Positions 56,357 to 63,649 are shown, numbered from the stretch's first letter. The stretch is 64,000 nucleotides of DNA from Oikopleura dioica (GCA_907165135.1 OU015568.1:4154001-4218000), one strand, 5' to 3'. The notes: generated by a model from the letters alone, not told the origin. Program-made: numbers and translations.

Positions 56357-57466
56357 GATGTCAACACAGGTTGATGCGCTCAGATAAATATTTTTAAGAA
56401 AAAATGATACTAAGATCCATGCTCAAATAAAAAAAGATAACTCGACATACCATTTTTTGCTAGAATCAAGCCGAATCCCATCCATCATTTTTGTCATTTA
56501 TGGAATCGCGGAATGAAAAGTCTGATTTTCATAATTTAATGACGATCTGTGTTTTTATGATGAAGGAAGTCGTTGGAGCTGATTTCTGGAAAATTAATTG
56601 CCGCACGTCGAGGGTGGGCAATTTTTTAGCCGCAACGAGTCGTTCTTGATTTCCGATTTGGTGGTTTATGAAGTTGATCTTAAAGTTCAGAGCTACTTCT
56701 TTTTATTGAAGAAAATTCTCAAAAAAGAGGCTTCAAAGGGATTTTATAACAAATAATAGTGAAAATAAGGGGGTAACTTGGGGTTTAGTTGACTAAAAAG
56801 TCGCCAAAGAATAGGGGATTTTCGGTGAGACACCCTTAAAAGTAATGACAGAATTCTGATCTGGCGCCATTCCAGAGCTGTGGCGTGAGAGGAAATTATA
56901 ATATCAGAATTGGAGGTAATAATGCAAATATCACAAGTTGTGTGCGCATTGCGATCGTCGTTCAGAAGACACGAGTGTTTACAATTGCAAGTATCAATTC
57001 GGGCCTAATAGTCTAAGAACACAAACTTCAAATTTATCGAACCAGCTTTTGCCTGTTTTCAGAATAGATAGAAAAATCACTAGAATTGGATTAAGAGAAG
57101 TGAATTGAAATCAACGAAGAGAATTGACTGAAGATAAGAAACAGGAACGGATCAAAGATAAATTCCCTTCTTTACGGAATAAAACCAATTATTCTCAGAT
57201 AACCATAAAACAGTACGTAGCTCAACGAATTTATTTTTTCCCTATCTTTCATATTCGACGATCATAATTTATCATTCGTAAGTTTCACCCAGGCCAATCT
57301 AGCATAATGCTGACAATTTGTTAAATCCAATTATACTTATCGTAAATCTTTTCAGGATATTTTCAAAATAATAATTATACTTTCCTTCGGCTGAGCTTTG
57401 AGAATCTAAATATATTGCTCCTCAAATACTTCTTTATCGATCCTCAAACTCAGAGTTGCCTGAATC

Positions 57467-60400
57467 ATGTGGTGGTGGTGGCTATTACTAGCCACCGTTC
57501 AAGGCAACAATGACCCTCTTCCTGCGCCCGAGTACACAGGCGGTGCTGGAAAATGCGTCATGTCTTGGACGAAATCAGACGGCTGCGGAAAGAACCCGCG
57601 ACTGACAGCGATCGAGACAGATTTCAGAAGCCTGCCAGATCCGGACTTGGGCTGGATGGATGATAATGGAAGGGAGTGCATTCTGAATAATCGAACAAGG
57701 GACGATCCAGATCCAGGACTGCCAGATCTCAGCCCTTTATTGGACCTCGTTGGACCCAATGCTGCCCCTTGCTATGAACCAGCTGGGATCGATGCTGAGG
57801 AGCCAAACCGTTTGCACCAAAATCTTCTTCAAAAAATCTGCCCGAAATTCGCAGAAACACATGACAAAGTCTGTTGCTCATACCCGCAAATGCAAGATTT
57901 CGACAAGAAATTTAACAAGATGTACAAGGGTTTTTTCCAAGCCTGTCCCTCCTGCCTCAAATCCCAGCTCGAGTACTACTGCAATCTCTACTGTCACCCA
58001 GAGCAGAGCGATTTCATCACTGTCAATCAAGTCTTCAACGCGACAAATGACAAGACGGAAAAACAAGGAGTCGATCATTTTACCGCCGCTCTTCCAATTT
58101 CTTACACAGACGATCTCTTCGACACCTGTAAAACTGTGAAATTTACTTGGTTTGTCAACACTCCTTGCATCAATGATTTGATACCGAGTGATGGCTTGGC
58201 GAGAAATTTGGTCTATGATAGATTCTGCAGGGATGTTCCTTCTAAAGATTGCACTCCATATGTTTGGCTGAACAATCAAGGTCAAGCAATAACAGAATGG
58301 CCTCGCTTTGGAACACTCAACAATGTCAAAGCGGGTCCGGAGGACGGCCCGGCTGGACATGTTTATAGTTGCACTGAAGATCTCACGCCAATATATGCGG
58401 CGCCAGGGATCGATGCCGATACACCTGTGGAATGTGGCTGCCAGAATTGCGCAGAAAGCTGTCCCGAAGTGAAAGAAATCGACCTTCAAGACCCATTTCA
58501 TCTTGACCAAATCGACCGGTCTTTCGGCTCATGTTTGTTTCGACCAACTTGTGGGCCGAATTATTTGATTCCAAACGGCGACGGGTTAAACCGACCAGAT
58601 GTGCCGTGCATGGCATACGATCGCCCAGCCTACGAGTGGAGGGAGGAGAACGATGCGGACAGAGGTTTTCTAGAGCGCTTGTACGAAGTCTGCCCGCGAT
58701 ACTTGAACAATTCCCTCGACGGAACTTATACAATGACATGTTGCGATCAAATCCAAATGAACACTCTTCGCGACCAAGTTTCTCAAATTCGTCAGCTTTT
58801 TGGTCGATGCCCTGCTTGTGTCGAAAATGCCATCAATATGTTTTGCCACTCCACTTGCGCTCCAGATCAGGCGTCCTTCATCGACCCCTGATCGGATTCA
58901 ATACTGTCGATCGAGACGGAAACGAGGCGATTGGAATCCACAGGGTGAATGTTTATCTGACAGAAGATTACGGAGAGCGGCTTTGGCAGAGCTGCAAGGA
59001 TGTCAACTTTCCGCAGACGAATGGAAAAGTCATCGAGGGTTTGATGTGCGATGGGCTTGTAGGAGATGACTGTAACGTCGAAACATGGTTGAATTTCCAA
59101 GGATCCACGAACAATGGCTTTTCCCCGCTGACGTATAACTATATTACCGTCGAGATGGGCGCGAAATCAGGAAAAGAACTCGACTTTGAAAATCGATGGA
59201 AAAAGCCGAGAGGGTTAGAGCCGCTGCCTGAAAGTGATGTTCCAAACGGAGCTATCCCTAAGACCTACGAAACCTTTCAATGCGAAAATGTTTACACAGA
59301 TCCTTACAGTGGAGTAAGCGGAACTTGCTCTTGTCAAGATTGCGAGGCAGTTTGTCCTGGTCTTTACGAGTACCCAGAGCCCGAACCCAAACCGACAATC
59401 GGGTCGATGGATAAATGGGCTTTCGTGGGCATGATGGTCGGAATTCTCCTCGTAGTTTTTGTCGTCACCTTTTAGTCGTCCGAAAAGCAATCAAAAACTG
59501 CCTCAAAGATGATCAAGTTCAAAGTGTTTCTCGAGAAAACATCGAGAAGAAATACGAAAAGAAAACGATCGATCCGTCCGAAATTCCTTGCATGGACAAA
59601 GTGCGATACAAGTCTGTCATGTTTCTCCAGTCAGCGTTTCATTGGTGGGCGAAAAGATTCGTTCTTCGTTTCCCAATACTCAATATTCTATTCTCCGTCG
59701 CTTGGACTGCTACTCTTCTAGCAGGATTCAAAGATATCGAATTCACAACAGATCCGATTCGATTGTGGGCCTCGCCAGAAAGCAGAAGCTTCAAGGAGTA
59801 CACAAAATACAATGAGTATTTCAACCCTTTTTATAGGGCTTCAATGATGATCGCAAGATTGAGGCCGGAATATGCAAAAATGAATGGGGGCGACTTTCAA
59901 TACTCTTCTCCTCAGGAATTGATTGACATCATCCGATGTCAATATTTATGAATAAGGAAAACATGAACTCTTTTAACCTTGACTTCTTCAGCAAGGCCGA
60001 TTGCCTTAGGGAATTGTCTACTAGACAAAGCGACAAAACTCGATAAAAACTCTTTGTCAATCAAATTAAGGGAACATTCACAATCGACAATTCATTAAAA
60101 CGAGAATACTGGGATGAACTGTACGACCTTCAGATGCGTCTCAAGAATCTCAATGCTTCGTATGAGTTTGACGGAGAAAAACGTTATGTTACCTGGGATC
60201 AAACCTGTCTCAATCCTTTGGCGAAAGAAGAAAATGGCTGCTCCTTGTTTTCGCCGTTCAATTACTTTCAAAACGACCGAGATTTGATTTGGAAAGACGA
60301 TTGGTATTTCGTAAAAGTCGATCAAACTCGAGAGGAAACGAGTTATTTGGATCACTTGATTTACTGCGCCAGATCTCCGTCAAGTCTCGGAAACAAGTTC

Positions 60401-63400
60401 TTGGTGAATATCGAAGATGACTTTGTCAATGGACTTCCCTGCGCAGGAGATTTTGGCTCACCAATTTTCCCCTATCTTGCTTTTGGTGGATACGAAGATG
60501 ACGATTACTGGAATGGCGAAGCAATGATTTTCAACTTCATCAATTCGAATGTCGAGGACAAGGATTCGGAAGAATTTGCGCGAGTTATGGCTTGGGAAGC
60601 GGAATTTATCGATATTATGACAGAAGAAGCGCCGAAATTGAAATACTACGATGTTGCGTATTTCTGCGAAAGATCTATCGAAGATGAGATTGACAAGACA
60701 GCTGAAGAAGATGTGGGCATCTTCATCATCGCGTATGTTGTCATTTTCTTGTACATCACTATCGCTCTTGGAAAATATTCGAGCATCAGGCGAGTTCCAA
60801 TCGACATGAAAGTCTCTCTCGCTGTTTCTGGCATCATCGTCATCCTCGCCTCCGCATTCGCAGCTACTGGAATCTTTGGCTGGCTCGGCGTTGCGTCAAA
60901 TTTGATTGTTGTTGAAGTCGTTCCTTTCCTTCTCCTAGCCATTGGCGCGGATAATGTGTTCATTCTCGTCATGGATATTCAGCGAGAAAAGAGAAGAGAT
61001 GGAGAAAGCTTGGACGATTTGATCGCTCGGGTATTTTCAAGAGCTGGACCGAGTATGCTTCTCTGCGCGATAACAGAATCAACGGTGTTTTTCATGGGGT
61101 CTGTGATTGATATGCCAGCGATAAAGGTACGACTAAGAATGCAGGAAGAGGAAATACAAATACGAAATTGCTATCAATGACATTCTTATAATAAAAAGCA
61201 AAATTCGTTAATTATCTTACCTGATTATGGTCTTTCATCTTTCAGTAATACTCGAAAAATTTTAGGTTTTTGCATTGAATGCCGGAATCGCCATCCTCTT
61301 CAACTTTATCCTACAAATCACCGCCTTCCTCGCCATCGTCAAGCTTGACCTATCCCGTCAAAACGGAAATCGATGGGACATCATCTGCTGTTACAAGTCC
61401 CGCTCTGATAAAGATGCGGTCAACGAAAACAAAGAATCAGTCATCGACAAGTTCTTCAGAAATTACTTCACGCCGGTTTTGATGCATGATTTGGTCGGTT
61501 TTGTGGTCATTTGCGCGTTTTCAGCGATGTTTGGTTACAGTTTATACAGTATTTCAACAGGTAATTCTGCACCAATTTACATTTATAAATGAATAAAAAT
61601 TATTATTGATGATCAAGTGAAACATCTTTTTATAAATACCGACAATTCGAGCTGAAAATAATTTTATGGTTTTCAAAAAATGCTTTTAGCTGTGGTTGGA
61701 TTGAATCAAAATCTCTCCGTTCCTCTCAACTCTTACGTCGCCAAGTATTTCGACTTCATGGAGACGTATCTTATGGTCGGCGTCCCTGTATATTTTGTTC
61801 TCGAGGGAAAATACCCATTTCACAAGGAAGAGTTTTCAAATCTGATCTGCGGAACATCTGGCTGCGATTTGTTTTCTCTTTCTGAGCAGATTTCAAGAGC
61901 TTCTCTACAACCTGAAAAGTAAAGTATTTGTCTGATAGACATTGTTTATATTTCAGGTCAAAAATCGCTACCCAAGCAACAATCTGGGTTGACGACTACA
62001 AAGATTGGCTCAAACCCTCTTCCTCTTGCTGCCGAACTGAAAACTGTAACTATCGAATCGACCCCGATGATCCGGAGTACAATCAAAAGTGCGATTTCTG
62101 CCCAGCCAACGTCGACGCTCCTGCTTTCCCAATTTTCGAAAATTCCTGTCTCGACTGCCAACGAGGCATTTTGTCGCCAGAAAAAGCTGAAGAAAGCTTC
62201 AAAACATATCTTGATTACTTTTTGCTAGGTAAAAATTATCTTTCCTTTTTCTTTTTCTTACAAGTTAAGATAAACCAAACGAATTCTGCTCAAAAGGTGG
62301 ATATGCGTCCTACAGTGCAGCTGTTAACTACACGATGGCGGATGAAGTCGTCTATGATTCCATCGCAGCATCAGCTTACATGGCTTATCATCCTGTCTGT
62401 GTTGATTCCGTTGACTGTCAGGTACTGGCCTATTGCTTTTTGGGCATGGGACTCAATTCAGTTTAGGCAAATCTCGAGATGGGACGAGAATTAGCGCATA
62501 ACATCACTTTGACGATTCGAGAAAAAGTTGCCACCATCAACAACCAGTCAGGTCTCGTTCTTGGGGATGAAGACTACGTCGACCCTGAATCCATCTCTGT
62601 CTGGACTTATGCCATCTACTACCCTTACTACGAACAGTACATCACTCTTGGTGGAGATGCTTTGATTCAACTTGGTATTTGTCTCATCCCAGGTTTGAAA
62701 GAAAGAGATGAAACTTGTCGTTCACGTTTCTTTAAGTTTTTGTCTTCACATTCATTCTGCTTGGATTCGACGTTGTTTCCGGACTGATAGTTTTGGTTAC
62801 TGTTGGTTTGATTGTCATTGATACTTATGGCTTCTGCGTTTTGTGGGATGTTGACATGAATGCTCTAACACTTATAATTATGGGCTAAGATTAAGTAGAT
62901 TCAATCAGACAAAACCTTAAAAAATCAGTTTCTTAATCTTCCTTCTCTATCAGATCGATCTTATATTAATTTTAGGTCAGGTTATCACTGTTATAATTTT
63001 ACTCATTAGAAAAGTTAGAAAGCATCCTTTTGGTTTTTGAAACAGATTTTTTCTAGAAAAAGAAGAAGCAATTAAATTAAGCCCCCTCAAGACCTGATTT
63101 CCGCTGCAGGCCTTTCCGTTGAATTCTGTGGACATACAGTCAGAACATTTGCCTTGACAACAGAAGGAACAAGAAAAGACCGAACAATCCAGACGATGTC
63201 TGTCATGGGCCCTAGTGTCCTTCTCGTAAGAAATCAACTGAAAACGAAAACTGAGTGTTTCTATTTAGGGTGTCGCTCTGACAAATTTGCCTGGAATCGT
63301 GTGCCTAAACTGGGCCAGTGCTCAGCTGATCGAAATTTTCTTCTTCAGGATGAATTTTGTCATGACTTTGCTTGGCATTGCTCATGGATTGATTCTCCTG

Positions 63401-63649
63401 CCGGTTATTCTCGCCTATTTCGGTGAGGCTTTCTTCATCACTCGAAACAAAAACCTTTCAGGCCCAAATCCGAACAAAGCAAAAATATACGAAGAACAGC
63501 AAGAAGCTATCGCCGAGCTTGGAAGAACTCGATCAGAAACGAAAACGGACAAAAAGACCGACTCGATCAAAATGAAGCCATCCTCCAAAATCGACCCGGC
63601 GGAGCCATCTGCGCCAGGATACGCTGATTTGGAAGAATCTGCTTTCTGA
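57467..63649 (+). CDS. NPC1: Niemann-Pick C1-like sterol transporter with two N-terminal domains; two apparent -1 frameshifts
   Basis: Signal peptide, two NPC1_N Cys patterns, TTDPIRLWASPES, a sterol-sensing domain (EVVPFLLLAIGADNVFILV), PVYFV...LICGTSGC, WVDDYKDWLKPSSSCCR, CSKGGYASYS, YYPYYEQY, and HGLILLPVILAYFG. It may be NPC1 or NPC1L1-like. Confidence 0.93.

What the first reader, a model, noticed from the sequence alone, without database searches (positions are those of the whole stretch)
57467..59360. NPC1 with two tandem sterol-binding N-terminal domains
Two complete NPC1_N Cys scaffolds precede TM1. NTD-a (about 57550-58475) has CCSYPQM, CPSC, YCHPEQSDF and CGCQNCAESCP. NTD-b (about 58530-59360) has CCDQIQM, CPAC, TCAPDQASF and CSCQDCEAVCP. 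Both keep the Gln equivalent to sterol-contacting Q79 of human NPC1. NTD-b is closer to the canonical sequence (NGFSPL versus NGQAPF), while NTD-a is divergent with Pro/Asp-rich inserts. Characterised NPC1/NPC1L1 proteins have one NTD. The extra domain could act as a tethered sterol donor replacing NPC2, or bind different dietary algal sterols (hypothesis). The whole region is intronless, unlike the rest of the gene.
Basis: partly seen in the sequence, partly recalled or inferred. Interest (0 to 1): 0.76.

Follow-up and report, generated by a model that had tools for sequence, protein, structure and literature searches.

The report
Sterol transporter with two capture domains
This plankton animal's version of the cholesterol-transport protein NPC1 carries two copies of the sterol-catching head domain in a row instead of one, and related plankton species share this layout, which no paper I found describes.

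Summary
Window 57467-59355 (+) encodes a signal peptide, a divergent NPC1_N domain (NTD-a), a 23-residue linker and a canonical NPC1_N domain (NTD-b). TM1 and the rest of a complete NPC1-type gene follow, ending at 63649.

- **Frame breaks.** The window has two single-base frame breaks, at C-run 58885-58888 and T-run 59470-59473. Both are assembly errors. Every short-read contig of run X1, and those of X2 at the first site, carries one extra base there. A 76%-identical relative (P0165) reads straight through both.
- **NTD-a is a real NPC1_N domain.** It scores 83.7 bits in Pfam against a cut-off of 27. It keeps all 18 scaffold cysteines plus two extra. Its AlphaFold2 model (pLDDT 82) matches the NCR1, NPC1L1 and NPC1 head domains.
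- **Conservation.** The tandem layout recurs in at least six divergent, unnamed metagenome lineages. Both domains are under purifying selection.
The Gln79 equivalent is not fixed in NTD-a: Q in 8 of 11 sequences, L in 2, M in 1. NTD-a also replaces the hydrophobic entrance residues with clade-conserved arginines. NTD-b keeps the canonical residues.
- **Open points.** The idea that NTD-a replaces NPC2 is untested. I obtained no transcript evidence.
- **Other multi-NTD proteins.** They exist unstudied in databases: five in a row in a sea urchin, and NTD-MLD-NTD in molluscs.

Verdict: a new variant of a known kind, of moderate interest.

The parts
57467..57505 (+). Start codon and short hydrophobic N-terminus (MWWWWLLLATVQG), the putative signal peptide
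   Evidence: This is the first ATG directly after an in-frame stop. The relative P0165 has a matching, longer hydrophobic start. No signal-peptide predictor was run, so this is inferred.
57554..58462 (+). NTD-a, the extra divergent NPC1_N domain (first to last scaffold Cys, residues 30-332)
   Evidence: Pfam PF16414 scores 83.7 bits against a cut-off of 27. It has 20 Cys: all 18 canonical plus C71 and C234. The AF2 model has pLDDT 82.3 and pTM 0.80. Foldseek top hits are the NCR1, NPC1L1 and NPC1 NTDs, with TMt 0.71-0.79.
57599..57766 (+). Pro/Asp-rich insert inside NTD-a (residues 45-100), between the CGKNP motif and the APCYEP motif
   Evidence: It is absent from canonical NTDs in alignment A1. 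pLDDT is 50-69. It contains 10 Asp and 7 Pro in 56 residues. Identity to P0165 is 68% over residues 1-100, which include the insert.
58463..58531 (+). 23-residue linker between the last Cys of NTD-a and the first Cys of NTD-b. It has no stop, no Met and no hydrophobic stretch.
   Evidence: Linkers of about 22-27 residues are seen in P0004, P0008, P0003 and P0167.
58532..59355 (+). NTD-b, the canonical NPC1_N domain (18 Cys), interrupted in the window by the first frame break
   Evidence: Pfam scores 77.6 bits (N-half) and 77.1 bits (C-half). The PDB best match is NPC1L1, at E 2.4e-14 and 5.3e-13. In P0165 the domain is unbroken and covers Pfam positions 3-241 of 244.
58885..58888 (+). C-run where the window lacks one base (assembly error), giving an apparent stop at 58889-58891
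   Evidence: All depth in X1 (77.8+89.5 of 167.3) and in X2 (7.61+8.58 of 16.2) carries an inserted C or T here. P0165 reads through the site.
59470..59473 (+). T-run where the window lacks one base (assembly error), inside TM1
   Evidence: An extra T is present in 212 of 212 depth in X1, but in only 14.9 of 87.5 in X2. P0165 reads VITFLVVRKAIKN across the site.
59416..59483 (+). TM1, preceded by a Pro/Glu-rich neck (59374-59394)
   Evidence: A hydrophobic run begins at WAFVG (59416). It aligns with the TM1 region of human NPC1 via P0023.
59484..59940 (+). Rest of exon 1: cytosolic loop, TM2 region and the start of the middle luminal domain. The exact donor site was not fixed.
   Evidence: tblastn with canonical NPC1 P0023 residues 379-455 hits 59619-59852. 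The open frame ends at 59948.
60071..63649 (+). Downstream short-intron exons: middle luminal domain, sterol-sensing domain, C-terminal luminal domain and TM8-13, then the stop
   Evidence: Pfam finds NPC1_MLD (128.9 bits) and Sterol-sensing (95.4 and 39.1 bits). tblastn is colinear with P0023 residues 471-1321.

Best explanation
Shown:
- The locus is an intact NPC1-family (RND-type) sterol transporter gene of an appendicularian-like animal.
- Its first exon encodes, as one polypeptide, a signal peptide, an extra divergent NPC1_N domain (NTD-a), a 23-residue linker, the canonical NPC1_N domain (NTD-b), a Pro-rich neck and TM1.
- The two frame breaks in the window are homopolymer assembly errors.
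- The layout is conserved in several divergent relatives, and both domains are under purifying selection.
- NTD-a forms its own old clade of NPC1_N domains.

Inferred: NTD-b is the working sterol acceptor that feeds the transporter. It keeps the Q79, L175/L176, Y192 and P202/F203-type residues.

Inferred, less certain: NTD-a is a second luminal lipid-binding module held about 20 residues above NTD-b. It captures sterol or a sterol-like lipid further from the membrane and increases or broadens delivery to NTD-b. Its pocket entrance is rebuilt: Arg replaces L175, Pro-Arg replaces P202-F203, and the Y192 equivalent is polar. Its partner or ligand therefore probably differs from that of a canonical NTD.
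For: - **One ORF.** NTD-a and the first half of NTD-b lie in one ORF.
- **Frame breaks refuted.** Short-read contigs and P0165/L003 read through both.
- **Complete gene.** It is colinear with a canonical 1340-aa NPC1 up to residue 1321, with the middle luminal and sterol-sensing domains found.
- **NTD-a identity.** Pfam 83.7 bits, the 18-Cys scaffold retained, an AF2 model with pLDDT 82, and Foldseek matches to sterol-bound NTD structures.
- **Junction-spanning ORFs in other lineages.** P0003, P0004, P0008/P0019, P0028, P0166 and P0167. L001 and L004 carry the transporter downstream.
- **Selection.** Between the window and L003, synonymous sites are saturated (pS about 0.78). pN is 0.18 for NTD-a and 0.11 for NTD-b.
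- **Dependence on the upstream signal peptide.** No Met, signal peptide or stop lies between the domains, so NTD-b can only reach the lumen behind NTD-a's signal peptide.
- **Site pattern**. It is read against the human sequence and published roles: Q79A and P202A/F203A abolish cholesterol binding (PMC4718804), and L175, L176, E191 and Y192 lie at the NPC2 interface (PMC6163316).
Against: - No RNA evidence. The two bulk RNA runs laid gave 3 reads and 0 reads, so a single transcript and the absence of an NTD-a-skipping isoform are not shown.
- No coordinates were available, so pocket volume and the positions of the arginines in the model were not measured.
- The Q79 equivalent varies in NTD-a (Q, L or M). 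One lineage (L001/L004) has lost the last scaffold Cys. NTD-a may therefore not bind sterol in the canonical way, or at all.
- A direct pocket-to-pocket hand-off between two like domains is geometrically awkward. Both would bury the 3-hydroxyl end first (inference from the published NPC2-to-NTD hand-off model).
Confidence: 0.55

Rival explanations
1. One reading: NTD-a is a tethered sterol donor that replaces soluble NPC2, making a self-contained NPC system in one chain.
For: NTD-a sits on a flexible linker of about 23 residues directly above NTD-b. NTD-b keeps the hydrophobic patch that in human NPC1 faces the donor (PMC6163316). In some lineages the polar Q79 equivalent of NTD-a is L or M, which would suit tail-first binding as in NPC2 (speculative).
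Against: NTD-a has the NPC1_N fold, not the ML fold of NPC2. In this window it keeps Q, so a hydroxyl-first orientation is expected, which does not allow a simple sliding hand-off. Whether the genome lacks NPC2 is unknown, because only this window could be read and no note or paper addresses it.
Confidence: 0.12
2. NTD-a no longer handles ordinary sterols. It binds a different ligand, for example an anionic sterol derivative or another lipid, or it acts as a spacer, shield or regulatory cap over NTD-b.
For: Clade-conserved Arg replaces the L175 equivalent, and Pro-Arg replaces P202-F203. The Y192 equivalent is polar. The Q79 equivalent is not fixed. NTD-a sits on a long stem branch of 1.5 changes per column as a separate clade. 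It carries a 56-residue acidic, low-confidence insert. The L001/L004 lineage lost one scaffold Cys.
Against: The full 18-Cys scaffold and the core helices are kept with very high model confidence. Q is kept in 8 of 11 sequences. Purifying selection shows function but does not say which.
Confidence: 0.25
3. The gene is a pseudogene, or the tandem is an assembly artefact.
For: The window as given has two frame breaks, with stop codons at 58889 and 59473.
Against: At the first break, all short-read depth of X1 and X2 restores the frame. At the second, all of X1 does, but only 14.9 of 87.5 in X2. Independent contigs L003, L001, L004 and L005 show the same tandem. pN is far below pS.
Confidence: 0.02
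4. NTD-a is optional: alternative or trans-splicing yields a canonical single-NTD isoform alongside the double-NTD form.
For: This was not excluded, because no RNA reads were obtained. Relatives have introns inside and after NTD-a.
Against: In this window the signal peptide, NTD-a and NTD-b lie on one exon. No Met or signal sequence lies before NTD-b.
Confidence: 0.08

Closest known systems
Human NPC1 (PDB 3GKH/3GKI NTD; 3JD8, 5U74, 6W5R full length)
   Same: It has the same overall order: NTD, Pro-rich neck, TM1, middle luminal domain, sterol-sensing domain, C-terminal luminal domain and TM13. NTD-b keeps the 18 Cys, Q79, a hydrophobic pair before C177 and the Pro of P202.
   Different: A second, divergent NPC1_N domain plus a 23-residue linker precedes the canonical one. 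N41 is Pro in both domains here, as in yeast NCR1.
NPC1L1 (PDB 3QNT NTD; 6V3F, 7DFZ)
   Same: It is the best sequence match for NTD-b in the PDB (E 2.4e-14) and the best TM-score for the NTD-a model (TMt 0.79). It takes sterol from the gut lumen with no known NPC2 step, a plausible analogy for a filter feeder (inference).
   Different: NPC1L1 has a single NTD. The cellular location and tissue of the window's protein are unknown.
Yeast NCR1 NTD with ergosterol (PDB 9F40)
   Same: It is the top Foldseek hit for the NTD-a model (E 1.5e-12, TMt 0.73). It shares Pro before the C42 equivalent.
   Different: It has a single NTD and works with a soluble Npc2.
Sea-urchin 'NPC1 N-terminal domain-containing protein' XP_030831391.1 (P0164)
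   Same: It has tandem NPC1_N domains in one predicted chain (5 stretches, 943.6 bits).
   Different: Its five repeats are near-identical and recent, and it has no transporter part. It is uncharacterised and not related to the NTD-a clade.
Mollusc NPC1-like protein WAR17615.1 (P0027, Mya arenaria) and Logan ORF P0014
   Same: They have two NPC1_N domains ahead of or within an NPC1-type protein.
   Different: The layout is NTD, a fragment of the middle luminal domain, then NTD and the rest, not NTD directly followed by NTD. The two NTDs are close paralogues. It may partly be a fused gene model.

Membership tests
NPC1/NPC1L1/NCR1 sterol transporters | Luminal NPC1_N domain (PF16414) with the nine-disulfide Cys scaffold | tested here: met
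   NTD-b scores 77.6 and 77.1 bits and has 18 Cys. The disulfide list comes from PMC6163316.
NPC1/NPC1L1/NCR1 sterol transporters | Middle luminal domain and sterol-sensing domain | tested here: met
   PF22314 scores 128.9 bits. PF12349 scores 95.4 and 39.1 bits on consecutive exons.
NPC1/NPC1L1/NCR1 sterol transporters | Colinear with a full-length family member through the last TM helices | tested here: met
   tblastn of P0023 residues 59-1321 (of 1340) maps in order across 57827-63502.
NPC1/NPC1L1/NCR1 sterol transporters | A single N-terminal domain, as in all solved and characterised members | tested here: not met
   There are two NPC1_N domains in tandem. This is the variant feature, not a reason to exclude membership.
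NPC1/NPC1L1/NCR1 sterol transporters | Sterol binding and transport | not testable with these tools
   This needs binding and transport assays.
NPC1_N domain (for NTD-a) | Pfam score above the gathering threshold | tested here: met
   83.7 bits against 27, E 2.1e-23.
NPC1_N domain (for NTD-a) | All 18 scaffold cysteines | tested here: met
   C30, 40, 102, 125, 136, 137, 160, 163, 172, 176, 221, 254, 262, 302, 323, 325, 328 and 332 map to human C25 through C247. C71 and C234 are extra.
NPC1_N domain (for NTD-a) | NPC1 NTD fold | tested here: met
   The AF2 model has pLDDT 82.3. Foldseek gives 9f40, 3qnt and 3gkh at probability 1.00 and TMt 0.71-0.79.
NPC1_N domain (for NTD-a) | Gln at the human Q79 position (needed for cholesterol binding in NPC1) | tested here: inconclusive
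   It is Q141 in the window. Across the NTD-a clade it is Q in 8, L in 2 and M in 1. In NTD-b it is Q in 7 of 7.
NPC1_N domain (for NTD-a) | Hydrophobic entrance and transfer residues (human L175/L176, Y192, P202/F203) | tested here: not met
   NTD-a has R-F, a polar residue and P-R at these positions. NTD-b has L-M, F and P-L (and manual reading).
NPC2 / ML-domain sterol carriers (for the 'replaces NPC2' idea) | ML (MD-2-related) beta-sandwich fold | tested here: not met
   NTD-a models as a helical, Cys-rich NPC1_N fold. The Foldseek list contains no ML-domain hit.

The most novel reading that the evidence does not exclude
In appendicularians the NPC hand-off has been internalised. NTD-a, with a rebuilt arginine-lined entrance and a relaxed pocket floor, acts as the first covalently tethered station of a two-step sterol relay. 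It either stands in for a lost NPC2 or is specialised for algal sterols or sterol sulfates. If so, one polypeptide does what two proteins do in other eukaryotes.
Probability: 0.12. Interest if true: 0.8.

Novelty: new variant of a known kind. Interest (0 to 1): 0.5.

Why it matters
How sterol passes from a soluble carrier into the NPC1 head domain and on into the transporter is still argued from structures and mutants of single-NTD proteins. A natural, conserved transporter with two different head domains in series offers a built-in comparison. One domain is canonical and the other has an altered entrance. This could be used to test what the entrance residues and the Q79 position do, whether head domains can pass sterol to each other, and how abundant filter feeders cope with mixed algal sterols. 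It also flags unstudied multi-NTD proteins in sea urchins and molluscs.

Tried and rejected
1. **RNA support.** The single read-laying run included two bulk oligo-dT RNA runs carrying the same species label. They gave 3 reads and 0 reads at 90% likeness or better, so they test nothing.
2. **Didomain structure.** MAFFT placed the NTD-b rows of relatives onto NTD-a of the query (A2, A3), so I did not submit a misaligned didomain job.
3. **Pocket geometry.** The structure tool returns no coordinates, so only sequence-level site mapping was possible.
4. **Origin of NTD-a.** The tree gives a separate long-stem clade and does not resolve whether it arose from NTD-b.
5. **Annotated full-length protein.** Word searches are limited by length, to 260-830 aa and 407-1295 aa. 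They found only unnamed metagenome ORFs.
6. **Literature.** Searches on tandem NPC1_N and on NPC1 or NPC2 in Oikopleura or tunicates found nothing relevant.
7. **P0011.** This is a 7571-aa fish protein with 13 matched stretches. Pfam reported no NPC1_N in the part scanned (residues 3000-7571), so I did not pursue it.
8. **Joined protein.** I did not build the joined, spliced or frame-bridged full-length protein.

Full report
**What is in the sequence**

The + strand ORF 57467-58891 (474 aa) starts with a short hydrophobic N-terminus. It then contains one full NPC1_N-like Cys scaffold, followed in the same frame by the first half of a second one. Pfam PF16414 hits this ORF at 149.7 bits in two stretches. 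The next frame (58888-59472) continues the second domain at 77.1 bits. Scored apart, NTD-a gives 83.7 bits and the N-half of NTD-b 77.6 bits, against a cut-off of 27. PDB sequence searches align NTD-b to NPC1L1, NPC1 and yeast NCR1 over the whole domain. NTD-a aligns to the same proteins more weakly, at E 1.6e-10 to NPC1L1.

**The two frame breaks are errors of the window**

The window changes frame at the C-run 58885-58888, with a stop at 58889, and again at the T-run 59470-59473, with a stop at 59473. I laid short-read contigs of two DNA runs on the stretch.

- At the first site every contig carries one extra base. It is C in one haplotype and T in the other. This accounts for 77.8+89.5 of 167.3 depth in X1 and 7.61+8.58 of 16.2 in X2.
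- At the second site an extra T is present in 212 of 212 depth in X1, but in only 14.9 of 87.5 in X2.
- Either inserted base at the first site gives the same residues.
- An independent metagenome contig (L003) encodes P0165, which is 76% identical. It reads straight through both places and through TM1 in one ORF.

Exon 1 is therefore continuous from 57467 to about 59940.

**It is a complete NPC1-type gene**

Downstream exons carry the middle luminal domain and the sterol-sensing domain. A canonical 1340-aa NPC1 (P0023) maps colinearly from residue 59 to 1321 across 57827-63502. Its NTD matches twice, at 57827-58468 and at 58670-59463. All searches used the pieces by reference.

**NTD-a is a real, folded NPC1_N domain**

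- It has 20 cysteines. Eighteen map one-to-one onto the human set C25 to C247, using alignment A1, the human sequence printed and the disulfide list in PMC6163316.
- C71 and C234 are extra. Both are also present in P0165.
- An AlphaFold2 model built on a 36-row alignment has mean pLDDT 82.3 and pTM 0.80. Only the Pro/Asp-rich insert (residues about 45-100) is uncertain.
- Foldseek against the PDB returns ergosterol-bound NCR1 NTD (9f40), NPC1L1 NTD (3qnt, TMt 0.79) and NPC1 NTD (3gkh) at probability 1.00.
- NTD-a and NTD-b share only about 24% identity.

**Conservation**

The exhaustive representative search found 446 proteins at E up to 0.001. After the window's own ORF, the best hits are unnamed metagenome ORFs of 37-51% identity. 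Several of them span the NTD-a/NTD-b junction: P0003, P0004, P0008, P0019 and P0028. A second word search added P0166 and P0167.

Contigs L001 and L004/L005 show the NTD-a C-terminal part, the linker, NTD-b and TM1, followed by the middle luminal and sterol-sensing domains. In L001, NTD-a is split over at least four exons. The linker is about 22-27 residues in all of these lineages.

Between the window and L003, synonymous sites are saturated (pS about 0.78). pN is 0.18 for NTD-a and 0.11 for NTD-b. Both domains are therefore constrained, with NTD-a evolving about 1.6 times faster.

In a tree of NTDs, the NTD-a sequences form one clade (SH-aLRT 100) on a long stem. This clade is separate from NTD-b and from all canonical NTDs. 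Its origin is not resolved.

**Functional sites**

I read these against human NPC1 and published mutant data. Q79A and P202A/F203A abolish cholesterol binding (PMC4718804). L175, L176, E191 and Y192 lie at the NPC2 interface (PMC6163316). The site pattern below comes and manual reading.

| Human position | NTD-b | NTD-a |
|---|---|---|
| Q79 | Q in 7 of 7 | Q in 8 of 11, L in 2, M in 1 (M in the 76% relative) |
| L175/L176 | L-M or L-L | R-F in most, also K-F and R-W |
| Y192 | F | variable, polar |
| P202/F203 | P-L | P-R, within a clade-conserved W-P-R motif |

NTD-b therefore looks like the working acceptor. NTD-a keeps the fold but has a rebuilt, partly basic entrance and a less fixed pocket floor. 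One lineage (L001/L004) has also replaced the last scaffold Cys with Trp.

**One polypeptide?**

No stop, Met or hydrophobic segment lies between the domains in any lineage seen. NTD-b has nine disulfides and must enter the lumen, which it can only do behind NTD-a's signal peptide (inference). Direct RNA evidence is missing. The two RNA runs laid gave 3 reads and 0 reads.

**Mechanism**

The best reading is that NTD-a is an extra luminal lipid-binding module, tethered above the canonical NTD. It captures sterol or a related lipid and raises or broadens supply to NTD-b and the transporter.

The NPC2-replacement idea is possible but weakly supported. NTD-a has the NTD fold, not the ML fold. In this species it keeps the polar Q. 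Two like pockets cannot pass a sterol by simple sliding without reversing its orientation (inference from the published hand-off model). NPC2 content of the genome could not be checked.

**Novelty**

I found no paper on tandem NPC1_N domains or on NPC1 or NPC2 in Oikopleura or tunicates. All solved family members have one NTD.

Multi-NTD predictions do exist elsewhere. A sea-urchin protein has five near-identical NTDs and no transporter. Mollusc sequences have NTD, a fragment of the middle luminal domain, then NTD and the rest. The feature is therefore a new, clade-conserved variant of a known family rather than a new kind of system.

**Taxon**

The taxon is inferred only. Earlier notes on this genome mention oikosin-like and hedgehog-loss features. 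The DNA runs assemble to about 40-90 Mb. This fits an appendicularian such as Oikopleura, but names were coded and I did not verify them.

Noticed in passing
window 58885-58888 and 59470-59473: Both are single-base homopolymer deletions in the assembly relative to short-read contigs. Apparent frameshifts elsewhere in this genome may be the same kind of error.
   Followed up: yes
window 57592: One divergent contig of run X2 (9.48 of 15.9 depth) lacks one base inside the NTD-a coding region. It could be a contig error, a haplotype with a compensating change not listed, or a broken allele. X1 does not show it.
   Followed up: no
P0164 (XP_030831391.1, Strongylocentrotus purpuratus): This predicted 1220-aa protein is made of five near-identical tandem NPC1_N domains with no transporter part. 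It appears uncharacterised.
   Followed up: partly
P0027 (WAR17615.1, Mya arenaria) and P0014 (Logan contig ORF, 788 aa): Both show NTD, a fragment of the middle luminal domain, then a second NTD. P0014 is one uninterrupted ORF on a 2.4-kb contig, so the mollusc layout may be real rather than a fused gene model.
   Followed up: partly
L001:4302-5552 and P0167: In this lineage the last scaffold Cys of NTD-a (human C247 equivalent) is Trp, in the motif C-E-R/S-V-W. One disulfide partner is therefore lost while the rest of the domain is kept.
   Followed up: no
window 57150-63149, runs X12 and X13: The two bulk RNA runs with the same species label gave almost no reads at 90% likeness or better. 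Either the gene is barely expressed in those samples, or the runs come from a divergent cryptic lineage.
   Followed up: no
window 59977-60045, 61129-61219 and 61565-61675: Contigs of run X1 skip 67, 89 and 109 bases at three places that fall between coding blocks. These are probably haplotype length differences in short introns.
   Followed up: no
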